Shown here piece by piece: positions 1,720 through 63,142 of a stretch of 64,000 bases of DNA; the stretch's first letter is position 1; each line of letters opens with the position of its first letter. This stretch comes from Octopus sinensis (taxonomy: Eukaryota). A program made the translations under genes and the position numbers. The DNA lies in assembly GCF_006345805.1 (NCBI RefSeq), contig NC_042997.1, positions 176,948,001 to 177,012,000 on the forward strand. Reading direction: 5' to 3'. The notes under the pieces were generated by a model that was given only the letters and a program-made list of their open reading frames with translations, had not been told where the DNA came from and ran no database searches.

Positions 1720-2062
1720 TTCTAAATTTGGCACCAGGGAGGCAGATTGTCAATTACATCGATCCCAGTATTTAAATGGTACTTTATTTCATCGATGAAA
1801 GGCAAAGTTGGCCTCGGTGGGATTTGTGTTCAGAACGTAGAGTCAGTAGTAATGAAGTTAAGCATTTTGTCCAATACATTAACGATTCAGCTGGTTCACT
1901 ACCTTAGTTCCACTTATAATATTGATTTCAAATTTTGGCACAAGGTCAGCAATATTGTGGGTGGGTGTAAGTCGATTATATCAACCCCAGTCCTCAATTG
2001 GTACTTATTTGATAGAAGGATGAAAGGCAAAATCGACCTCGGTGGAATTTGAAATCAGAACA
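1720..2062 (-). mobile_element. two decayed fragments of SINE family A (tRNA-derived, octopus-type)
   Basis: Matches the family A body in reverse (gatgaaaggcaaagtcgacctcggtggaatttgaa.tcagaac) at ~1720-1870 and ~1928-2062. Confidence 0.7.
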
Positions 2063-2065
2063 TAT

Positions 2066-2672
2066 TTTTTTTCTACTTTAGGCACAAGGCCCGAAATTTT
2101 TGAGGAGGAGGCCAGTCTATTAGATCGATCCCCAGTACGCAACTGGTACTTAATTTATTGACCCCGAAACCATAAAGGCAAAGTCGACCTCGGCGAAATT
2201 TGAACTCAGAACGTTAAGACAGACGAAATACTGCTAAGCATATCGCCCGGCGTGCTAACGTTTCTTATTTCTTTATTGCCCACAAGGGGCTAAACATAGA
2301 GAAGACAAACAAGGACAGACAAAAGGGTTAAGTCGATTACATCGACCCCAGTGCATAATTGGTACTTATTTAATCGACCCCGAAAGGATGAAAGGCAAAG
2401 TCGACCTCGGCAGAATTTGAACTCAGAACGTAGCGGCAGACAAAATACCTATTTCTTTACTACTACAAGGGCCTAAACACACAGGGGACAAACAAAGACA
2501 GACAAACGGATTAAGTCGATTACATCGACCCCAGGACGTAACTGGTATCGACCCCGAAAGGATGAAAGGCAAAGTCGACCTCGGTGGAATTTGAACTCAG
2601 AACGTAACGGCAGACGAAATACGGCCACGCATTTCGCCCGGCGTGCTAACGTTTCTGCCAGCTCGCCGCCTT
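2066..2672 (-). mobile_element. SINE family A head-to-tail trimer
   Basis: One full head (aaggcggcgagctggcagaaacgttagcacgccgggcg at 2672 leftwards), three bodies, tails tail-1/tail-1/tail-2; junctions at 2448/2449 and 2263/2264. Confidence 0.9.
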
Positions 2673-3850: not shown

Positions 3851-5610
3851 CCAGAATTGAATGGAAATGCTATAATCTATTGAACCAACTCCAGTGTATT
3901 TCTAACACTTCTTTTACTGACTTAAACGCATACAATAAGTCATTCAGACAAGATCTCTACTGTTTCTTCAACTTCCTCGCCATTTTTCTTTCCTAAATAG
4001 CTAGGCATCTACTCTGCTTCAATGCCGCTTCCTAGGCTTTCTAGTTAAACTATTGACGGAAATCGAATCTTGCATATCTTGTTTGCTCAAGCAAATATAT
4101 TAACCATTATATTGCATGAGAATCGCACTATGGTTACTATATGTTCCTGCTTTTTTCCCCACACAATCAGGAGCGTTTACAGAAGAAATTTATTGTCTAA
4201 ATTAAATAGTGATTCTCTCTTTCTCTTTCTCTCACACACTCACTCACTCACTCACTCACTTACTCAAGGATTCAGAGAGTTTTCCTATCTTCGCGTTACT
4301 GAAATATTAAACGAACAAGAAGTAAACCACTTTCTGATTCATGAGAAGTAAATGTCTCTCAGGTGTCTTTTGTTAAAAAGAAGAATTGAATTTGGCATCC
4401 CAAGCTAATTAAATACTGGCCAATTATACAACAGCAAACCACACTACCTAACAATAACATTTTTAAAAAAGAAGTTAGTCACACGAAGAGGCGGGACAAT
4501 GCCCATGGATTCGTGCTGATTCTTCTATATTTGCGAACTTGATAGGGAGAATGTATATAGGAAAAATGTGGTCGGAGAGGTAAAGCAAAGTCTGGTCCAA
4601 TGGCTGGTGGATAGGCCATTAAGAGTTTAGCAAATCTGTTATGAAAACAATACAGTGCTGAGTAATAAAATACGAACTTCACGTCGTTCGGTTGAATGTC
4701 CGGTGCCATATCCTTTCGAATATCGGGCGAGCAAATAGTTAGACGGCCGATAAAAGACAAAAAAATAATCGAGTGTGATCTCATTTAGGAAATAGCAATT
4801 CTTATTTTGTAATATCTTCCAGTTAAATAATACACGTCCAACTATTTTGTCCTTGGTTAACAAAGATCTAAGGAAACACATATGAAACTTATCAATTATA
4901 GTTACCTCAAGGATAGTACATTTTTAAGAATTCATATCCTGGAAATTGTGTACGAATATATATGAACGCTATTGTTTATCTACTGGGAATTCTCTTCAGA
5001 AATTAATACTGATGTATGGAAAAATAAAGATTTGGCTTAGCTTGCGTTATGAGGGGAATTCAAACATCTGATGGAAATGGTAAGTCATTGATCAGAAGAA
5101 ACATTTTCATAAGGAATGAATGCATAAGTAGTATAGCCTAACACTAGTGAAGTTTTGTATCTGAGAAAGAAGTAATAGAATATAAAGAAATTATTTTTAA
5201 TGCGAGACAGTGTTCTCCAGAAAGAAGGCTGTCACTCCGAACCAAATACGATTAAACTAAAAAATTCCGTTATTATCGTATTGGTCCCAATTTCAGAGTT
5301 AATTCATAAGAATTTTCTCCTCGTCAGCGATAAATACGGTAAAAATAAATGAAATACTTACTTATACCCATGGAAGACAACTTAATTTTAGAAATTTATG
5401 TCGGCTTACATCGAGACGCGTGCTTATAGTGATAAATTATATGGTTATTGACGATTTGTCTATTTTCGGCATATTTGGCATTAGAAATTTTTTTCTTTTG
5501 CCCTTGTTTATAAATTAAACCTTTAAAGGTATTTTTTAATATGCTGGCCATTGATAGAATTTTTTTCGAAAATTTTTTATCCTATATTAGATGTAAGTTT
5601 AACAGTGTTC

Positions 5611-5783
5611 ACTTCCGGATTCCCACTCTATGAGAGTTTTCTAGAATGTTCGAGACCTTTCTCGAAGCTCCCGGTTTACGTGGAAGTCGGGGACTTCCGG
5701 TTCATCTCTTATATAAAGGACAAAAATTCTAAATTCGCGCCACTCCGTGTCTGTCTGTGTCTGTCTAGGACGGCATTGAGTCA
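5611..5783 (+). promoter_or_regulatory. heat-shock-type core promoter: HSE + ETS sites + TATA + Inr + AP-1
   Basis: HSE GAG-tt-TTC-ta-GAA-tg-TTC-ga-GAC-ct-TTC-tc-GAA at 5634-5666; ACTTCCGG at 5611 and 5693, GGAAGT at 5682; TATATAAA 5710-5717; Inr-like CCACTCC with A at 5742 (32 nt from the TATA T); TGAGTCA 5777-5783; local CpG enrichment. Confidence 0.8.
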
Positions 5784-5798
5784 AAGCGCCGCACTTAC

Positions 5799-5843
5799 AC
5801 TCGTTCGCGCACACATTCGCCTTTCTTACTCGGAGACATGTGA
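5799..5843 (-). CDS. candidate 45-nt exon (VTCLRVRKANVCANE in phase 1)
   Basis: Acceptor gtgttctgtttgcag| and donor |gtaagt; symmetric phase 1 and open; overlaps the 5' region of the plus-strand promoter, so it may be chance. Confidence 0.25.
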
Positions 5844-6072
5844 CTGCAAACAGAACACTTCCTGTAATGTTATAAGCTTTCCTTCAATTATCTTTGTATG
5901 TTAACTCATTACCTCCAGTAATAAAAGTTATGACTTATTACAAACGTTTCGCGAATTTCTATTTTCTTATTGTTACGAACAAGATGGTGACCCCTCTTTC
6001 TCACATACTGGCTAAATTGTAGTGTGTCATTAAGTCTATGTATAACTATAAGACGGATAACCCCGACAGCAC

Positions 6073-6074
<2 letters not shown>

Positions 6075-6106
<32 letters not shown>

Positions 6107-6470
6107 TGTATGTATGTATGTATGTATGTACGTAGGTACGTACGTATGTATGTATGTATGTATGTATGTATGTATGTATGTATGTATGTATGTATGTATG
6201 TATGTATGCATGCATGTATGTAGGTATGTATGCATGCATACATTCATACAGAACAGGCAGGCAGACGGACGGACGACCGACAGACAAATAGATAGATAGA
6301 TAGAGAGAGAAAGAGAGAGATGGATGGATGGATGATGGAAAGATAGATAGATAGATAGATGTGTGTATGTATGCATGTAGATATGTATGTATGTATGCAT
6401 GCATGTATGTATGTATGCATGTATGTATGTATGTATGTATGTATGTATGTATGTATGTATGTATATATGC
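6075..6470. repeat. compound microsatellite (TATG)n/(GACG)n/(GATA)n
   Basis: Direct reading. Confidence 0.97.
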
Positions 6471-7369
6471 ATATATTGCTTATTCTGATTCTACTTGAAA
6501 ACATCAGAATTTCTAGCTCTCAAAACTGATGATATTCAGCATGGCCTTCATGGTAACAAGTTCAGCGATTCGAATACAATGCCTTAATTTTTATGGCCTC
6601 GAATCAACTTTTAGTAGGTGCCAATGTTATTTTACGTTTTAGCTTAACTGCGGAATTAAAGGCATAGAAAAAAACAAAAAAAAGCAAAAAAAAACTAAAA
6701 CGTTTGTCATAGATCGAAAATAGTTTATATCACACGGGTACCATAGATGCATATTTTATTAAAAACTGAAGCTTCTATCGCTGTCGTGTTTGCGTTGAAG
6801 CTTATGCAATTATTAATATTACATACTTGTTTCTTTGGTAGCAAAACTGCACAGACATTAAACATACCCATTTCTGAAACGGTTTGGAAGAGCACATTAG
6901 AAAATATACTCCTAAATACACTGGCTGAATAGAATCAGAAATAGTGAACAAATATCTCTGCAATTACTCACTGTCTGTAATAGAATGAACTACGTTTTGG
7001 ATTACGAAATTAACTGAAATTAAGATTATATACGTATGCTTGTATCAGTGTTGGGGTTAAAATTTAAAAGGAAGTGGTTCTTTCTTTCACTTCCTAAGTT
7101 GTTGTCTATGAAATCAGGAATCACCCCTACGTCTTATTTTACATACCTTATTTTTGTGGATGAAATAGCAAGATATAAAATACAAACAATGAAAAACATG
7201 CAAACATACAAGTAACGATGGTTTTTATATAAGATACTTTTATTAATCACGCTTCAAATATTTCCATATTGAAATTTGATTTTCTTTGTATTTTTTGTTG
7301 GTTGTATGTTTTACTATATTTCGTCACAGTGTGATTCCACCCACCCCAATCACTTTTACGTTTCTATCT

Positions 7370-14199: not shown

Positions 14200-14926
14200 G
14201 AGAAGAAATGAACGCAGATAAAAAGAAGCAGCAAGGAAGGAGGAAAATGTACGGTCAGTTTGCAACAAATGTGAACGCCAAGACAGATACAGAAGACCGA
14301 TGGCTATGGATAAGGAAGAGTGAATTGAAGCTAGAGACAGAAACACACATATGCGCAGCTCAAGAGCAAGCGTTAAGGATCAACTATGTGAACTGCAGAA
14401 TAGACAACGCTACTGACAGCGACAAATGCAGAGGGTGTGGTGAGAGGATTGAAACGGTATGGTACATCGTTAGCGAATGCCCGAAATTGGCACACTGCTA
14501 ATACAAAAGACAACATAACAATGTAGGTAGAATGATCCATTGGGAGCTCTGTGGAAATCACAGCCTATAAAGAGCAAAGACATAGTATGAACAAACCTCA
14601 GGAAGAGTCACCGAGAATGAGATTTGAAAAATCTGGAGATGCAATGATCCAGTGCGATCACCTGACCAAACCGGACATTGTTGTATTAAGTAAAAAAGAA
14701 AGGACATGCTTGATAATCGACATAGCATGCCCCGATGACAATAAGATAAAAGTGACAGAAGAAGAAATGAACAACTATGACAATTTGAAGTGGGAAATAC
14801 GAAGGTTGTGGTCAATGAGGAGAGTAGACGTGATACCAATAGTAATTGGCGCACTTGGAAGTATCAGCACTCAACTACCAGCATAGCTGAAAAAGATCGG
14901 TGCAAGTGTGAAGGTAGAACACCTAC
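14200..14926 (+). mobile_element. R4/Dong-clade non-LTR retrotransposon 3' fragment (zinc knuckle + restriction-like endonuclease)
   Basis: MYGQF; LETETHICAAQEQAL; CRGCGERIETVWYIVSECPKLA (CCHC-derived); KPDIVV..IIDIACP..(PD-D/ExK); VIPIVIGALGS; stops and frameshifts. Confidence 0.85.
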
Positions 14927-20136: not shown

Positions 20137-20225
20137 CTGATGAGAAAAAATATTTTCTTGCAATGGATCGAAATCTTGTGAGTTGAGCGTAGTTGAATGA
20201 GTTGATTGCTACTTATTTTATCTAT

Positions 20226-20458
20226 AAGGCGGCGAGCTGGCAGAAACGTTAGCACGCCGGGCGAAATGCGTAACCGTATTTCGTCTGCCGTTACGTTCTG
20301 AGTTCAAATTCCGCCGAGGTCAACTTTGCCTTTCATCCTTTCGGGGTCGATAAATTAAGTAGCAGTTACGCACTGGGATCGATGTAATCGACTTAATCCG
20401 TTTGTCTGTCCTTGTTTGTCCTCTCTGTGTTTAGCCCCTTGTGGGTAGTAAAGAAATA
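20226..20458 (+). mobile_element. full-length SINE family A monomer (tail-1) with 22-bp TSD
   Basis: TSD gattgctacttattttatctat at 20204-20225 and 20459-20480; B-box-like gagttcaaattcc. Confidence 0.95.
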
Positions 20459-28459: not shown

Positions 28460-28652
28460 ATTCTTTTTTTCAGTTATTTGACTGCAGCCATGTTGGAGCA
28501 CCGCCTTCAAAGTTTTTTTAGTCGAACAACTCGACCTCTGGAGGTTTTTAAAGCCTAGTACTTATTCTATCGTTTTTTGCTGAACTGCTATGTTAAACGA
28601 ATGCAACCACCACCAAACCGGTTGTCAAGCGGTGATGGGGGACAAGCAAAAA
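28460..28652 (-). mobile_element. SINE family B (CORE-like, OR2-type by recollection) 3' part
   Basis: ttcagttatttgactgcagccatgttggagcaccgcc...agcctagtacttattctatc...gttgtcaagcggtgatggggg. Confidence 0.8.
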
Positions 28653-28681
28653 CACACACACACACGCAGAGGCATATATAT

Positions 28682-28718
<37 letters not shown>

Positions 28719-31915: not shown

Positions 31916-31957
31916 TAGTTATATATGTATGCGCACACATACACACATATATATATA

Positions 31958-32118
31958 TACGACGGGCTTCTTTCAGTTTCCGTCTACCAAATACACTCAC
32001 AAGGCTTGTGTCGACCCGAGGCTATAGTAGAAGACACTTCCCGAAGGGGCAACGCAGTGGGACTGAAGCCGGAACCATGTGGTTGGGAAGCAAGCTTCTT
32101 AACACACATCATGCCTGT
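31958..32118 (-). mobile_element. SINE family B 5' part
   Basis: acgacgggcttctttcagtttccgtctaccaaat...gaaccatgtggttgggaagcaagcttctta. Confidence 0.9.
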
Positions 32119-32739: not shown

Positions 32740-33315
32740 TGATGAGTATTCTCTTGCGGAATTTCTTGTCAAGATCTAGCTTTGAAGATGCTTTCTTGTT
32801 CTTTTTATGAAGCGTGCTGTCCATTATGTCTCAGAGGTGTTCAATAGGGTTCATGTCTGGTGACTTGGAAGCTTGGCCATGGAAGCTTTTTAATGCCATT
32901 CTCATCCAACAAATCATGGGTCATTTTAGCCGTGTGACAAGGATTCCCATCTTCCATAAATAGTCTTCTTTAATCATTTTACCACTGGAGAAGATTGGAA
33001 GATTATCAGAATTTATGTTTCCTTCACTCTCCATCATCTCTTATCACTCATTGCTACAAATTGCTCCCCAGACCATCACAGAATAGCTGCCGTGTTTCAT
33101 TGTTGGCTGCAATATTTTCACATCAAATTCTTGATCGCAGTCTCCAGACCCACACTCGACAGCTGTCAGGAAATAAGCAAATCTGGACTCATCAGAGAAT
33201 ATGACAAGGTCCCAAAATGCCTTTCCACCATCTCACTGGCCCAGGCTTTCCTCCGCTTGATGTTGGCTGGTCGAAGAAGGGGCTTCCTTCTTGCTGCTCT
33301 GCCATAGCAAGCAAG
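32740..33315 (-). mobile_element. Tc1 (DD34E-type) transposase relic
   Basis: YGRAARRKPLLRPANIKRRK; QPTMKHGSYSVMVWGAI; FMEDGNPCHTAK; NGIKKLPWP; MNPIEHL. Confidence 0.9.
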
Positions 33316-33862
33316 TTTGTAGAGATACCTGACAGCTATTCTGGGATTTACATCAACTTGTTCTGTTACCGATATTTTTTGACAGTTGTGTCAACACGGA
33401 GGTCTACATGGACATTTTGGATCAATTTTGTGCTCGAACTCACTGAAGATGAAAAACAGGTGTACTCTTTCTGGCAGGACAGAGCGACTTGCTACACTTC
33501 TCTGGTGTACATGCAGCAAGTCCGTGGGATCTTCTGTGAGGAACGCACAGTTAGCAAAAATTTGTGGCTACCTCGTTCTCCTGACCTTTCAACGTGTGAT
33601 TATTATTTCTGGGGACACTTGAAAAGCACGTTGTACGAAATAGATTTGCGCATAATACAGGAACTGAAGCATTATATCACGCATGTGCTCGCCGTCATCG
33701 ATGTTGCTATTTTACCTGAACGTGGTTAGATGTGCACAACTGTGTGTATTGATGCTACAAAATCTTCTATGGTGGTGCGTCCTTTAAAACACGTGTAAAT
33801 TTATTTTTGTATTTAGACTATGTTACTGAACCTGGGCCATTTTTCCTTGTGCCACTCTGTAT
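33316..33862 (+). mobile_element. Tc1/mariner-superfamily (DD37D/DD41D-like) transposase 3' relic
   Basis: FWQDRATCYTS (FQQDGATxHT) and LWLPRSPDLSTCDYYFWGHLKSTLY (WPPRSPDL.P.DF.LWG.LK..VY); probable terminus cactctgta. Confidence 0.85.
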
Positions 33863-38539: not shown

Positions 38540-38689
38540 TGTAGGCGTGGCTGTGTCGTAAGAAGCTTCCTTTCTAATCAGAGGAGTCCGGGCTCAGTCC
38601 CACTGCGTGGTATCTTGGGCGAGTATCTACTACTATAGCCTCGGGCCGACCAACCGTTAGATTTAGTAGACAGACGAAAGAAGCTCGTC

Positions 38690-38771
<82 letters not shown>

Positions 38772-38959
38772 TATAAATGTATGTTAATATCTATGCGTAG
38801 GAGTCTCTGTGTCAATGTTTGTCCCCCACACCACTGCTTGACAAGGCTTTGGTCGGCCCGTGGCTTTAGTAAGGGCACTTGACAAGGTGCCACGCATTGG
38901 GAATGAACCCAGAACCATGTGGTTGGGAAGCAAGTTCCTACGACACAGCCATGTTTGTG

Positions 38960-38962
<3 letters not shown>
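38540..38962. mobile_element. two SINE family B copies in opposite orientation (+ 38540-~38845, - 38843-38962)
   Basis: + head gtaggcgtggctgtgtcgtaagaagc; - head gaaccatgtggttgggaagcaag..gacacagccatg. Confidence 0.8.
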
Positions 38963-38994
<32 letters not shown>

Positions 38995-44060: not shown

Positions 44061-44292
44061 AAAGGCGGCGAGCTGGCAGAAACGTTAACACGCCGGGCGA
44101 AATGCTTAGCGGTATTTCGTCTGCATTATGTTCTGAGTTCAAATTCCGCCGAGGTCGACTTTGCCTTTCATCCTTTCGGGGTCGATAAATTAAGTATCAG
44201 TTACGCACTGGGGTAGCTGTAATCGACTTAGTCCGTTTGTCTGTCCTTGTTTGTCCCCTCTATGTTTAGCCCCTTGTGGACAGTAAAGAAAT
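44061..44292 (+). mobile_element. full-length SINE family A monomer (tail-1) with 13-bp TSD
   Basis: TSD aacaaaatactgt at 44044-44056 and 44293-44305. Confidence 0.95.
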
Positions 44293-44544
44293 AACAAAAT
44301 ACTGTCAGGTCTAGCATTTGGGTTGGAATGATCGAAGATTGGAATGATCGAAAATTGGAATGATCGAGGGAGTTTTCGCACGTTGTAGACTATGTGCATC
44401 ATTTGGTTGGATCACTAAGAGATGTTGATAATAATCAGATATTTGGATGAGTTTTGAGTGGATTCAGTGTCAAGTTATTAACTCCAAGTCAAGTCTAATC
44501 AAAGGCATTCCAGTCATAAACATACCTCGTATTTTATTCTTTTA

Positions 44545-44852
44545 TTTATTTCAGTCATTTGACTGCGACCATGCTGGAGCACCGCCTTGAAGGGTTTTAG
44601 TCGTACAAGTTGACCCTAGGATTTATTCTTTGTAAGCCTAGTACTTATTCTATCGGTCTGTCAAGCGATGGCGGTGGGAGGGACACAGACACACAGATAT
44701 AAACAGACACACACACTCACATACATACGACGGGCTTCTTTCAGTTTCCGTCTGTCAAATCCACTAACAAGGTTTTTGTCGGCCCGAGGCTATAGTAGAA
44801 GACACTTGCCCAAGGTGACACACAGTGGGACTGAATCCAGAACCATGTGCGC
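44545..44852 (-). mobile_element. SINE family B copy
   Basis: cagtcatttgactgcgaccatgctggagcaccgcc...cgacgggcttctttcagtttccgtc...gaagacacttgcccaaggtg. Confidence 0.9.
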
Positions 44853-53382: not shown

Positions 53383-53469
53383 ATATATAATATATATATT
53401 ATATATATATAATATATAATATATAATATATATATATATATATATAATATATAATATATAATATATATA

Positions 53470-53790
53470 GGCGCAGGAGTGGCTGTGTGGTAAGTAGCTT
53501 GCTTGCCAACCACATGGTTCTGGGGTCAGTCCCACTGCGTGGCACCTTGGACAAGTGTCTTCTACCATAGCCTCGGGCCGACCAAAGCCTTGTGAGTGGA
53601 TTTGGTAGACGGAAACTGAAAGAAGCCCGTCGTATATATGTATATATATATATATTTGCGTGTGTGTGTTTGTGTGTCTGTGTTTGTCCCCCTAGCATTG
53701 ATTGACAACCGATACTGGTGTGTTTCTGTCCCCTAACTTAGCGGTTCGGCAAAAGAGACCTATAGAACAAGTACTGGGCTTACGAAAGAT
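53470..53790 (+). mobile_element. SINE family B, near-complete copy
   Basis: ggcgcaggagtggctgtgtggtaag..gtcagtcccactgcgtggcaccttggacaagtgtcttct..gaaagaagcccgtcg..cttagcggttcggcaaaagagacc. Confidence 0.92.
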
Positions 53791-55726: not shown

Positions 55727-55815
<89 letters not shown>

Positions 55816-56321
55816 GTCTATCGTCAATATTGTCACGCCTCCTTCCTTCAAACGGGAAGGAAGAGCTATTTTCATCATCCTTGTGGCTATGGCGAAAGAA
55901 TGTATCTGGTGGACGCGTCTGAAAGGATTGGAGACAAACACTTCCTCTCTGGTCAATCTCTCATCAACTTCTTCAAGTACCACTTGAAAAGGAAAGTGAG
56001 AGTAGAGAGGCAAGTTTTGTCTAGCGAATGTTTTAAAAAAAGATGGGTGAATGTTGCAAGAATGGCACGTATGAATGACGAAGCCACCTTGAGCATAGTC
56101 CTATGAACCCAGAAATCGAAAACAGAGAGTTACTTATTTGCAAAAAAAAAAAAAAAAAAAAAAAAAAGAATATAAAATGTGACTTCATTGACCGAGGTTA
56201 CCGTGGTCTTTTCCGTAGGCTTTTCTTTCCACGGGTAAACCTCACCTGTCCTCCCCTTTACACTTCATATTGACATTTCTGTGATAACGATCCCTATTGA
56301 TCATTTTTTTTTTTTTTCTCT

Positions 56322-58315: not shown

Positions 58316-58748
58316 AAGGCGGCGAGTAGCAGAAACGTTAGCATGCCGGGCGAATTGCTTAAAGGTTTTTCGTCTGTCTTTTATGTTCTGAGCTCAAATT
58401 CCGTCGAGGTCGACTTTGCCTTTCATCCTTTCGGGGTCGATAAATTAAGTACCAGTTACGCACTGGGGTCGATGTAATCGACTTAATCCCTTTGTCTGTC
58501 CTTGATTGTCCCCTCTATGTTTAGCCCCTTGTGGGCAATAATGAAATAAGAAACGTTAGCACGCCGGGTGAAATGCTTCGCGGTATTTCGTTTGTCTTTA
58601 CGTTCTGAGTTCAAATTCTGCCGAGGTCGATTTTGCCTTTCATCCTTTCGGGGTTGATTAATTGAGTACCATTTGCGTACTGGGGTCGATCTAATCGACT
58701 GGCTACTTCCCCCTAAATTTCGAGCCTTTTGCCTAGAGTAGAAAAGAA
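58316..58748 (+). mobile_element. SINE family A dimer (tail-1 + tail-2)
   Basis: Junction gaaataag|aaacgttagc at 58550/58551; ends aaatttcgagccttttgcctagagtagaaaagaat. Confidence 0.92.
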
Positions 58749-59880
58749 TAAAATAGCTTACCTCTGCGTCATAGAAAATAATATGACACAGAAAAACGGA
58801 AGTCAGCCATTATCTTCTCCTAAAAGTCTCAAATCGAACAAAGTTGAACCTTTCTTTAATAATGCAACAACGGTAATAGAAAAATATAACCAAGCTGATC
58901 AAAACGACAAAATACACAACAATAACAAAATTTGCTAACGCGTCCTATATAACTAATTCAACAAAAGAACCCCACCAAAACTAAATACTGAACCAACCGT
59001 AAAACGATATAAGCCAAACTGTCTTTAATAAAACCTTCATAAATCTAAAAAAAAATTCATAACCATAGAAGATATAGATATTACAATGATGCAGGGAGTA
59101 AAGATACAACTCTAATAAAGGACACTTCAATGCCAACTAAACGTGTAAATAAGAGCAAATAAAACCACAACTGAGGTCTCAAACCATACATCAGTCCATA
59201 GGTCCAGTACTCAGATTCAACAAATGTAAGCAAACAAAACACGCTCTATAATAATATGAGATGTATGTCTTCAATATGAAAACTCATAAACGTATACGTG
59301 GCATCGACATTACCGACTAAATTAAGAACTCCAGCTGCAAGAGAATAACACCAGATTGGACATTTCAGCTACAGCACACGACTACTATAATTCACATTCC
59401 AGCTATAACATATGAGCACACACCAACAAGTCGTAATTGGTATAGACTTTAATTCGTTCAACATATCATGGTATACAGACAATGCAGATAACACATGAGA
59501 TACTAACAGCCCAACTAATTTTTTTTTGTTTTTGAAAGATCCGTCTCGACGTATCTCTATACTTCTCTAAGTTAACTATTTTAAAGACAATACTTTCTGC
59601 TTCATACATATGCATGTCACATACACACAACAAGTAGCTCATCAAAATCTCTTTCAATCAACCGCCTATCAACAATACAATCCCCTCTATAAAAAAATGA
59701 ACAAAACAGGAATATGTTGAAAACAACTTTTAAATGGCTCTATTGGAAATATATCATCCAAAATAGATAATTAATTCGTAGAATTCAGCAACACTATAAT
59801 TTCCATACCCTCTGTTATACATAGTTTTATACTTAAAATCTAAAATTGAAATATGAACAGTGTACATTATAAACCCAAAT

Positions 59881-62769: not shown

Positions 62770-63142
62770 AGGCGGCGAGCTGGCAGAAACGTCAGCACGC
62801 CGGGCGAAATGCGCAGCCGTATTTCGTCTGCCGTTACGTTCTGAGTTCAAATTCCGCCGAGGTCGACTTTACCTTTCTTCCTTTCGGGGTCGATTAAATA
62901 AGTCCCAGTTACGCATTGGGGTCGATATAATCGACTTAATCCGTTTGTCAGTCCTTGCTTGTCCTCTCTGTGTTTAGCCCCTTGTGGGTAGTAAAGAAAT
63001 AGGTATTTCGTCTGCTGCTACCTTTTGAGTTCAAATTCCGCCGGGGTCGATTAAATAAGTACCAGTTCCGCACTGGAATCGGTGTAATCGATTTAATTCC
63101 TTCTCTAAATTTGAGGCCTTGTGCTTCCGCTACAAAGGATTT
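62770..63142 (+). mobile_element. SINE family A dimer with one 16-bp TSD around the whole unit
   Basis: TSD tctatgcacttctcta at 62754-62769 and 63143-63158; junction aaagaaatag|gtatttcg at 63002/63003. Confidence 0.93.

What the first reader, a model, noticed from the sequence alone, without database searches (positions are those of the whole stretch)
5611..5783. Textbook heat-shock promoter with no heat-shock gene behind it
Seen: seven alternating nGAAn units (five perfect) at 5634-5666, three ETS-type GGAA motifs, TATATAAA at 5710, an Inr-like CCACTCC at canonical spacing, and an AP-1 site. Established: long HSE arrays just upstream of a TATA box mark strongly HSF1-induced genes such as hsp70/hsp90/sHSP. 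No Hsp ORF is recognisable anywhere downstream in the window. Inference: it drives a stress-induced non-coding RNA, a non-coding first exon of a distant gene, or a TE-borne HSE module (as Helitrons supply in Caenorhabditis). It is antisense to the candidate minus-strand exon chain.
Basis: partly seen in the sequence, partly recalled or inferred. Interest (0 to 1): 0.8.

Follow-up and report, generated by a model that had tools for sequence, protein, structure and literature searches.

The report
Heat-shock promoter inside a retrotransposon LTR
The "orphan" heat-shock promoter is the built-in promoter of an old, 5'-truncated solo LTR from a gypsy-like retrotransposon family scattered through this octopod-like genome, so no heat-shock gene is expected behind it; elsewhere in the genome a LINE repeatedly sits exactly at this promoter's predicted start site.

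Summary
The motifs are real and non-random. They are not a unique promoter.

- **What it is.** Window 5639-6076 is one copy, 75-89% identical to the others, of a dispersed ~510-bp repeat of the window's own genome. The repeat is an LTR.
- **Evidence for an LTR.** It has TGTAG...CACTATA ends and a fixed 4-bp target duplication. One pair of copies shares a single duplication, AGGT. A tRNA-Trp-type primer site, a gag-like ORF and a protease motif lie downstream. A purine tract and an integrase remnant lie upstream.
- **Layout.** The order reads as U3/R/U5: heat-shock element (HSE) array, ETS/ACGTG motifs, TATA, Inr, then AATAAA.
- **Family feature.** Of 37 copies with a whole array, 31 keep at least 5 perfect units and 4 keep 7 of 7.
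- **The window copy.** It lacks the first 73 bp, has no internal region beside it, and can make at most a ~200-nt RNA.
- **Elsewhere in the genome.** An L1/Tx1-type LINE occupies the predicted +1 of this LTR, with 10-15-bp duplications.

Heat induction and HSF binding are untested. The finding is an ordinary TE-borne promoter; the LINE-at-start-site arrangement is the more interesting by-product.

The parts
5257..5641 (.). Unrelated flanking repeat that abuts the truncated LTR.
   Evidence: blocks 5257-5377, 5386-5595 and 5560-5641 match C24:10451900-10453000 at 85-92%. In that copy the sequence continues differently after ...GAGAGTTTTC.
5639..6076 (+). 5'-truncated solo LTR. It corresponds to positions 74-510 of the ~510-bp family LTR, read as U3 (part), R and U5.
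   Evidence: 75-89% identity to more than 40 dispersed copies, all starting their match at 5639 and ending at about 6076; no internal retroelement sequence elsewhere in the window.
5639..5671 (+). HSE array of the LTR U3: TTC-GAA-TTC-GAc-TTC-GAA-TcC. The family form has TTC as its seventh unit.
   Evidence: the array is present in phase in 37 copies. Units 1, 2, 5 and 6 are intact in 89-95% of copies. Four copies have 7 of 7 perfect units.
5678..5700 (+). ACGTG core plus two inverted ETS-type sites (GGAAGT / ACTTCCGG) between the HSE array and the TATA box.
   Evidence: for coordinates; family columns 111-140 are conserved, with a majority fraction of 0.86-0.91.
5710..5717 (+). TATA box (TATATAAA).
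   Evidence: these are among the most conserved columns of the LTR, with a majority fraction of 0.98.
5740..5746 (+). Inr-like CCACTCC. The predicted +1 is the A at 5742, which would mark the start of R.
   Evidence: the six printed LINE 3' junctions of the family abut the LTR at or within a base of this A.
5742..5756 (+). Target site of the family-specific LINE (+1 to +15). It is empty in the window copy.
   Evidence: duplications of at least 10 and up to 15 bp of this stretch flank the LINE in the composites on C12, C16 and C1.
5777..5783 (+). AP-1-like TGAGTCA within R. It reads TGGGTCA in other LTR subfamilies.
5920..5925 (+). AATAAA polyadenylation signal of the LTR, near the end of R.
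   Evidence: family columns 351-370 have a majority fraction of 0.92-0.96.
6070..6076 (+). 3' terminus of the LTR (CACTATA).
   Evidence: family similarity ends sharply here, and in other copies the 4-bp target duplication follows.
6077..6250 (.). (TATG)n microsatellite directly after the LTR. It is not part of the element.
   Evidence: The sub-threshold Rfam miRNA hits here are simple-repeat artefacts.

Best explanation
Window 5639-6076 is an old, 5'-truncated solo LTR of a Ty3/gypsy-like LTR retrotransposon family. The heat-shock promoter is the retroelement's own U3 promoter.

Its order is: seven-unit HSE array, ACGTG and two ETS sites, TATA box, Inr (+1 at 5742, the start of R), AATAAA at 5920 (the end of R), U5, and the terminus CACTATA at 6076.

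Shown:
- repeat membership of the window copy;
- the LTR nature of the family;
- presence of the HSE array across the family;
- absence of any gene, internal region or LINE behind the window copy.

Inferred:
- HSF trimers bind the array under stress and switch on pol II transcription from the Inr;
- in intact elements this would give genomic RNA of the retrotransposon, as in ONSEN-type stress activation;
- in this solo copy it would give at most a ~180-200-nt polyadenylated R-region RNA.

A further family-level result is structural, with its function inferred. An L1/Tx1-type LINE inserts specifically at +1 to +13/15 of this LTR. There it would be transcribed from the HSE/TATA promoter. Its RNA would carry short LTR-derived ends that could guide it to new LTR copies.
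For: Repeat membership:
- One search listed 41 matches from 845 first-look candidates. Searches agree.

LTR nature:
- The termini are TGTAG...CACTATA. Among 17 full-length copies, 10 have a perfect 4-bp target duplication and 5 more match 3 of 4. This fits the TGTNR plus 4-bp pattern of gypsy-type integrases (PMC2836005).
- At C4:103667504-103671232, two sister copies in direct orientation share one outer duplication, AGGT.
- In four loci the LTR end is followed by AAA+TGGTGACCCC(C)GACGT, which is complementary to the tRNA-Trp 3' end as I remember it. The downstream flanks of those loci are homologous over stretches of about 0.25-0.95 kb.
- Those flanks encode a gag-like ORF (DUF7041, E 7e-14), a CWYH..C motif and a VDTGS protease motif.
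- A purine tract abuts two 3' LTRs, and an Integrase_H2C2 remnant lies upstream of one of them (E 5e-7).

HSE array as a family trait:
- Of 37 copies, 31 have at least 5 perfect units. Triplet columns score 0.93, spacers 0.79 and TATA 0.98.
- The genome's own intronless hsp70 genes carry the same kind of array: 5 units about 370 bp upstream of the coding region.

LINE:
- It encodes APE (PF03372) and RT (PF00078). Its relatives carry zf-RVT and hit human L1 ORF2p best.
- All 7 LINE 3' ends examined are followed by the LTR's 3' part (from about position 184), and the six printed junctions abut at or within a base of the Inr A.
- In three composites the LINE is flanked by 10-15-bp duplications of the LTR sequence. 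In two of them the duplications match that copy's own LTR subfamily.
Against: - No expression, HSF-binding or heat-induction data exist here. The function of the HSE array is inferred from motif quality alone.
- Extra conservation of the GAA/TTC triplets over other non-CpG columns is only marginal (0.927 against 0.882, permutation p = 0.054).
- The 3' terminus is TA rather than CA in most copies.
The superfamily therefore rests on the integrase zinc-finger remnant, the termini and the duplication length.
- The tRNA-Trp match rests on memory of the vertebrate tRNA, not on this genome's gene.
- The window copy's own target duplication cannot be checked because its 5' end is missing.
- The copies are 11-27% diverged, so the family is probably extinct.
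Confidence: 0.8

Rival explanations
1. This is a locus-specific host promoter. It would drive a stress-induced non-coding RNA, or the non-coding first exon of a distant gene, possibly by exaptation of this particular LTR copy.
For: The promoter motifs of the window copy are largely intact: 5 perfect HSE units, TATA and Inr. Solo LTRs are often co-opted as promoters, which is general knowledge. No data here exclude read-through past the AATAAA.
Against: The whole stretch is a dispersed repeat with sharp family boundaries. It has its own conserved AATAAA 178 nt after the predicted start. The first ATG after the start is followed at once by a stop (ATGTGA at 5838). A microsatellite and no ORF follow. 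The copy is no better preserved than its relatives.
Confidence: 0.07
2. The ~510-bp unit is not an LTR. It would be a non-autonomous DNA transposon of the Ginger or Tx1D type, or the fused 5' and 3' ends of the LINE itself, that is, an internal-deletion derivative.
For: Most copies are isolated units of uniform length with an 8-bp imperfect terminal inverted repeat and a 4-bp duplication. Ginger2 elements share TGTNR ends and 4-bp duplications. The LINE always occurs inside the unit, as Tx1L does in Tx1D.
Against: - A pair of copies shares one duplication around an internal region.
- A primer-binding-site-like sequence, gag, a protease motif, a purine tract and an integrase remnant lie next to several copies.
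- Ginger terminal inverted repeats are 40-270 bp long.
- A fixed 4-bp duplication and TG termini are not LINE features.
- The duplications flanking the LINE copy the local LTR subfamily sequence, as expected for insertion into a pre-existing unit.
Confidence: 0.05
3. The LINE is not target-specific. One ancestral chance insertion into an LTR would have been copied along with the retroelement, or by segmental duplication. The 'start-site homing' picture would then be an artefact of common descent.
For: Only about 7 LINE copies were found, and all are old. Retrotransposition of an LTR element carrying a nested LINE could in principle spread the composite.
Against: The flanking duplications differ between composites (A[C/T]TCCATGTCTGTCT against ATTCAGTGCCTGT). 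In each composite both copies carry the state of the surrounding LTR subfamily, which independent decay from a single insertion would not produce. The LINE copies have different 5' ends: one is full-length, one is 5'-truncated and one has an internal deletion. No LINE copy was found outside the LTR (0 of 7).
Confidence: 0.15
4. The GAA/TTC array is not a functional HSF site. It would be a palindromic U3 repeat that binds another factor or none, kept only by descent.
For: The excess triplet conservation is marginal (p = 0.054). Most copies are neutral relics. No binding data exist.
Against: Six or seven in-phase inverted units are far more than the three needed for an HSF trimer, by the established HSE definition. 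Two subfamilies differ in spacer bases and in unit 4 yet keep phase and triplets. The same motif type precedes the genome's own hsp70 genes. The array sits 39 bp upstream of a 98%-conserved TATA box.
Confidence: 0.2

Closest known systems
ONSEN/ATCOPIA78 of Arabidopsis, a heat-activated LTR retrotransposon with HSEs in its LTR (PMC8376061, PMC7329337)
   Same: The HSF-binding elements sit in the U3 of the LTR, so the element's own transcription is wired to the host heat-shock response. Solo and full copies spread the module around the genome.
   Different: ONSEN is a plant Copia element. This one is an animal (octopod-like) element with gypsy-type integrase features and a tRNA-Trp-type primer site. 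The array is longer (7 units) and is coupled to ETS/ACGTG motifs. Heat induction is untested, and the family looks extinct.
HSE-carrying Helitrons of Caenorhabditis (PMC6927752)
   Same: A transposable element family distributes ready-made HSEs through a genome.
   Different: The carrier here is an LTR with a 4-bp duplication and TG termini, not a rolling-circle Helitron. The HSEs come with the element's own TATA box, Inr and poly(A) signal, so they form a complete transcription unit rather than a loose enhancer.
Tx1L LINE inside the Tx1D transposon of Xenopus, and other target-specific Tx1- and R1-clade LINEs (PMC4494074, PMC4640811)
   Same: An APE-encoding LINE of L1/Tx1-type architecture occurs only at one fixed site of another repeated sequence, flanked by a duplication of that site.
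   Different: The target here is the predicted transcription start of an LTR promoter, not a piggyBac MITE, an snRNA or rRNA gene, or a microsatellite. Membership of the Tx1 clade proper was not tested by phylogeny.
R2 in 28S rDNA, where a LINE is co-transcribed from the target's promoter (PMC4494074)
   Same: The LINE may need no promoter of its own, because the target supplies transcription. Target-derived RNA ends can reinforce specific integration.
   Different: R2 uses a restriction-like endonuclease and pol I read-through. Here it would be an APE-type LINE placed 13-15 nt downstream of a pol II TATA/Inr promoter of heat-shock type. Co-transcription is inferred, not shown.
The genome's own intronless hsp70 genes, in a cluster at C15:33.07-33.12 Mb
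   Same: They carry contiguous inverted nGAAn arrays of the same quality (GAAacTTCtgGAAcgTTCcaGAAag, 5 units).
   Different: Those arrays are followed about 370 bp later by a 640-660-aa HSP70 ORF. There is no sequence similarity to the LTR beyond the HSE motif itself (best E 0.02), so there is no sign that the LTR captured an hsp70 promoter.

Membership tests
hsp70-type heat-shock gene promoter | At least three contiguous inverted nGAAn units (an HSF trimer site) close upstream of a core promoter | tested here: met
   There are 7 units, 5 of them perfect, ending 39 bp before TATATAAA. An Inr lies 32 nt after the TATA box.
hsp70-type heat-shock gene promoter | A chaperone (Hsp70, Hsp90 or sHSP) coding region downstream | tested here: not met
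   No ORF follows. No listed PF00012 match falls in the window's range. The repeat ends at 6076 with its own AATAAA at 5920. sHSP and Hsp90 profiles were not run.
hsp70-type heat-shock gene promoter | HSF1 binding and heat-inducible transcription | not testable with these tools
   This needs ChIP or EMSA, CAGE or RNA-seq with and without heat, or a reporter assay.
LTR of an LTR retrotransposon (Ty3/gypsy-like) | TG...CA (TGTNR) termini with a short inverted repeat | tested here: met
   The 5' end is TGTAG(T)GA in nearly all copies. The 3' end is TCACTATA, or TCACTACA in L017. The 3' dinucleotide is mostly TA, not CA. The TGTNR rule comes from PMC2836005.
LTR of an LTR retrotransposon (Ty3/gypsy-like) | Fixed-length target-site duplication of 4-6 bp | tested here: met
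   Among 17 full-length copies, 10 have a perfect 4-bp duplication and 5 match 3 of 4.
LTR of an LTR retrotransposon (Ty3/gypsy-like) | Two LTRs in direct orientation flanking an internal region and sharing one duplication | tested here: met
   At C4:103667504-103671232 the outer flanks are AGGT and AGGT, and the two LTRs share subfamily-specific variants. Only one such pair was found, and its internal region is decayed (2.76 kb).
LTR of an LTR retrotransposon (Ty3/gypsy-like) | Primer-binding site complementary to a tRNA 3' end just after the 5' LTR | tested here: inconclusive
   AAA+TGGTGACCCC(C)GACGT follows the LTR in four loci. It equals the complement of the tRNA-Trp 3' end as I remember it from vertebrates.
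LTR of an LTR retrotransposon (Ty3/gypsy-like) | Polypurine tract abutting the 3' LTR | tested here: met
   AAGAGGAGAG (C4 LTR2) and GAGGAGGGAG (L019) lie directly upstream of the LTR start, within homologous internal sequence.
LTR of an LTR retrotransposon (Ty3/gypsy-like) | Internal gag-pol with protease, RT/RNase H and integrase | tested here: inconclusive
   A gag-like DUF7041, a VDTGS protease motif and an Integrase_H2C2 remnant were seen in separate pieces.
Target-specific non-LTR retrotransposon (Tx1/R1 type) | ORF2 with an APE-type endonuclease and a reverse transcriptase | tested here: met
   PF03372 and PF00078 were found in composite copies. Relatives carry PF13966 zf-RVT. The best solved-structure matches are human L1 ORF2p.
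Target-specific non-LTR retrotransposon (Tx1/R1 type) | All or nearly all copies at the same position of one target sequence, flanked by a duplication of it | tested here: met
   All 7 LINE 3' ends examined are followed by the LTR's 3' part from about position 184, and the six printed junctions abut at or within a base of the Inr A. Three composites have 10-15-bp duplications. The sample is small.
Target-specific non-LTR retrotransposon (Tx1/R1 type) | Placement in the Tx1 (or R1) clade by RT phylogeny | not tested
   No labelled reference sequences were at hand. Only L1-group affinity is shown.
   The ends are TGTAG...CACTATA with a 4-bp duplication.

The most novel reading that the evidence does not exclude
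An L1/Tx1-type LINE of this octopod lineage has specialised in inserting at +1 to +13/15 of the heat-shock-type LTR promoter. By doing so it would borrow an HSF-dependent pol II promoter that it does not carry itself. It would be transcribed with short LTR-derived 5' and 3' ends, and would use those ends to home to further LTR copies. This would be a stress-switchable 'parasite of a parasite' that uses a dispersed LTR family as a safe haven.
Probability: 0.3. Interest if true: 0.65.

Novelty: new member of a known kind. Interest (0 to 1): 0.4.

Why it matters
For genome annotation, this removes a false lead. A perfect-looking heat-shock promoter with no gene behind it is explained as a relic LTR, and dozens of such 'orphan' HSE/TATA modules should be expected in this genome and masked as one family.

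For biology, it would add an animal (cephalopod) case to the short list of retroelements whose LTRs are wired to the heat-shock response. ONSEN in plants is the paradigm. It would also show that such LTRs scatter complete HSF-type transcription units that could be co-opted near host genes.

The LINE that sits at the LTR's predicted start site would extend the known targets of site-specific LINEs (rDNA, snRNA genes, microsatellites, a MITE) to a pol II promoter of another retroelement. It would give a testable model for how a promoter-less LINE obtains regulated transcription.

Tried and rejected
- **Tc1/mariner or other TIR transposon.** I suspected this from the terminal similarity and subterminal GTGACCCC motifs. 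I dropped it after finding the fixed 4-bp duplication, the primer site, gag and the integrase remnant.
- **Ginger- or Tx1D-like MITE.** Rejected; see the rival explanations.
- **'LINE plus its own UTRs', with the 510-bp unit as an internal-deletion derivative.** Rejected because of the 4-bp duplication, the TG termini and the subfamily-matched duplications around the LINE.
- **Pattern search for LTR end + N0-4 + TGG.** It gave 68 hits against 31 in the control, mostly chance, and I first read it as 'no primer site'. The few genuine hits (CACTATAAAATGG) later proved to be real LTR/primer-site junctions.
- **Capture of an hsp70 promoter.** There is no similarity beyond the HSE itself.
- **Octopod relatives of the LINE** (Argonauta hians and GCA_024449705.1). 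No LTR or HSE lies next to them. They are only 53-55% identical, so this says little.
- **LTR-derived sequence at the LINE's 5' end.** A 12-nt near-copy of the target lies 14 nt inside the C16 LINE. A general local-alignment test against shuffles was not significant, so I treat it as a hint only.
- **Rfam on 4500-7000.** Only sub-threshold hits were found, all in the microsatellite. ARAGORN found no tRNA in the window.
- **Hand-joined gag query.** In one search the fifth query was a gag fragment that I had joined by hand from three copies. I do not use or reproduce it. The unmodified ORF (query 1) gives the same DUF7041 match.
- The genome search closed and the fetch from genomes. A genome-wide count of the HSE module and retrieval of the RT region were therefore not done.

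Full report
**Observation.**
- Seven alternating 5-bp units lie at 5633-5667, five of them perfect.
- TATATAAA is at 5710-5717 and CCACTCC at 5740-5746, with its A at 5742, 32 nt after the first T of the TATA box.
- TGAGTCA is at 5777-5783.
- ETS-type motifs are at 5611-5618, 5682-5687 and 5693-5700.

A 28-nt degenerate HSE pattern is expected 0.02 times per window and is found only here. In 200 block shuffles the best 7-unit frame never held more than 4 perfect units, against 5 observed. Nothing resembling a chaperone ORF follows. A genome-wide HSP70 profile search lists no match inside the window's range.

**The stretch is a dispersed repeat.**
A self-search of the window's genome (2.72 Gb, 13,516 contigs; the window is C1:176948001-177012000) with 5560-5860 listed 41 matches from 845 first-look candidates. 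Nearly all begin exactly at window 5639. A search with 5840-6080 gave 40 more, ending at about 6076. Alignments show a unit of about 510 bp with sharp ends. The window copy matches positions 74-510 at 75-89% identity. Other copies extend 73 bp further 5'.

In the window that part is replaced by an unrelated repeat, which also occurs on C24.

A conserved 38-mer of the unit occurs 23 times at up to 3 mismatches. The family is therefore modest, probably tens to low hundreds of copies. An exact count was not possible because the genome search closed.

**The unit is an LTR.**
- Full-length copies start TGTAG(T)GA and end TCACTATA. Among 17 copies, 10 are flanked by a perfect 4-bp direct repeat of variable sequence and 5 more match 3 of 4.
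- TGTNR termini with 4-bp duplications are the signature of gypsy-type integrases, shared with Ginger DNA transposons (PMC2836005).
- At C4:103667504-103671232, two sister copies lie in direct orientation 2.76 kb apart. The outer flanks of the pair are both AGGT.
- In that element and at three other loci, the LTR end is followed by AAA and TGGTGACCCC(C)GACGT. To my memory this is the complement of the 3' end of tRNA-Trp, the primer used by avian retroviruses.
- The downstream flanks of these four loci are homologous over stretches of about 0.25-0.95 kb. They contain a gag-like ORF with DUF7041 (E 7e-14), a CWYH...C motif and a VDTGS protease motif.
- Upstream of two other copies lies homologous sequence ending in a purine tract that abuts the LTR. 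Upstream of one of them there is an Integrase_H2C2 remnant (E 5e-7).

I analysed these pieces separately and built no joined element or consensus. The RT region could not be fetched because the fetch from genomes closed.

**Layout and HSE conservation.**
Read as an LTR, the motif order is a standard U3/R/U5:
- HSE array (family positions 74-108);
- ACGTG and two ETS sites;
- TATA box (145-152);
- Inr (175-181);
- a conserved AATAAA about 180 nt later;
- about 150 nt of U5.

Across 42 aligned copies the TATA columns are the best conserved (0.98). HSE triplet columns score 0.92 and the 2-nt spacers 0.76. Excluding CpG-affected columns, triplets score 0.927 against 0.882 for the rest. This is only marginal (permutation p = 0.054).

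Of 37 copies with a complete array, 31 keep at least 5 perfect units, 23 keep at least 6, and 4 keep 7 of 7. One subfamily reads TTC-GAA-TTC-GAA-TTC-GAA-TTC throughout. The array is therefore an ancestral feature of the family that has kept its phase.

The genome's own intronless hsp70 genes (the C15 cluster) carry 5-unit arrays of the same type about 370 bp upstream of the coding region. They show no other similarity to the LTR.

**What the window copy can do.**
It has no internal region, no primer site and no LINE beside it. A (TATG)n microsatellite follows it. The first ATG after the predicted start is followed at once by a stop. Rfam finds nothing in it. If the promoter still fires, the product would be an R-region RNA of about 180-200 nt. 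Exaptation of this copy cannot be excluded, but nothing supports it.

**A LINE at the start site (family level, outside the window).**
At C12:77.137-77.142 Mb and C16:42.792-42.797 Mb, LTR positions 1-198 and 184-510 are separated by about 5 kb.
- The insert encodes an ORF1 with one CCHC knuckle and an ORF2 with APE (PF03372) and RT (PF00078).
- A read-through of the C16 ORF2 finds relatives with RVT_1, Exo_endo_phos and zf-RVT. The closest are from Argonauta hians and another assembly, at 53-55% identity.
- One of these relatives hits human L1 ORF2p at 3e-50, against R2 at 1e-24. The LINE therefore has L1/Tx1-type architecture.
- A third composite at C1:50.52 Mb holds a 1.85-kb internally deleted copy with the same 3' end.
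- All six genomic matches to the LINE 3' end, plus the C16 copy, are followed by the LTR from about position 184. The six printed junctions abut at or within a base of the A of the Inr.
- The LINE is flanked by duplications of the LTR's +1 to +13/15. They read A(C/T)TCCATGTCTGTCT on C12, ATTCAGTGCCTGT on C16, and at least AGTGTCTGTC on C1. On C12 and C16 both copies carry the variant of the surrounding LTR subfamily.

This pattern argues for independent, site-specific insertions rather than one inherited accident. The sample is small, and I give the inheritance rival 0.15.

The closest precedents are:
- Tx1L in the Tx1D transposon of Xenopus, and the other target-specific Tx1- and R1-clade LINEs (PMC4494074, PMC4640811);
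- R2, which relies on its target's promoter.

It is inference that the LINE is transcribed from the HSE/TATA promoter and homes through LTR-derived RNA ends. A 12-nt near-copy of the target inside the C16 LINE's 5' end is a hint, not proof.

**Verdict.**
The window feature itself is an ordinary, decayed solo LTR.

HSE-bearing LTRs are a known kind (ONSEN, PMC8376061), as are Helitron-borne HSEs (PMC6927752). A literature search for heat-shock elements in octopus transposable elements returned nothing. A recent Octopus vulgaris repeat annotation lists L1-Tx1 and Ty3-like families but does not mention heat or promoters.

Interest is moderate. It rests mainly on the LINE-at-start-site arrangement and on the untested prospect of heat-switchable retroelements in a cephalopod.

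Noticed in passing
window 14202-14886 (+): Two adjacent stop-to-stop ORFs look like the C-terminal part of a different non-LTR retrotransposon ORF2, with a CRGCGERIETVWYIVSECPKL zinc-knuckle-like motif. They are unrelated to the LTR-targeting LINE.
   Followed up: no
window 33205-33729 (+): A 174-aa ORF ends in ...LWLPRSPDLSTCDYYFWGHLKSTLY. From memory this resembles the C-terminus of mariner-type DDE transposases.
   Followed up: no
window 53467-53789, 31928-32108, 38543-38727, 38841-38964, 44532-44849, 28461-28700: A short interspersed repeat present many times in the window also sits as an insert inside the internal region of one LTR element (L021). Its translation recurs in the ORF list as ...QGLCRPEAIVEDTS.../...HGSGFSPTA....
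   Followed up: partly
window 2060-2265, 58549-58750, 20219-20393, 44066-44228, 62773-62936 and others: A second abundant ~200-bp interspersed repeat. It was detected because it also lies in locus L050.
   Followed up: no
window 55760-56007 (+): A weak protein-level match (33-52% over about 80 aa, E 5e-8) to the C-terminal end of the LINE ORF2. It is probably a remnant of a related but different LINE family.
   Followed up: no
G000 C12:77229750-77233213 (L017/L018): Two LTR copies in inverted orientation, with flanks 100% identical over more than 1 kb. This is either a perfect palindromic duplication or an assembly artefact.
   Followed up: no
G000 C4:103668009-103668200 (L053 about 598-790), also L021 and L009: The LTR 3' terminus plus primer-site unit (~45 bp...CACTATA AAA TGGTGACCC..GACGTTAAGAACAC) is tandemly repeated two to four times after some 5' LTRs. 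The cause is unknown; it could be aberrant strand transfer or slippage.
   Followed up: partly
G000 C15:33066643-33115130: A cluster of at least five HSP70-family genes or fragments. Two are intact intronless genes (646-658 aa open frames), each with a 5-unit HSE array about 370 bp upstream. One has a second array 350 bp further up.
   Followed up: partly
window 6078-6480: Sub-threshold Rfam hits to mir-297, mir-466 and other families all fall in the (TATG)n/(GTAT)n microsatellite. They are simple-repeat artefacts.
   Followed up: yes
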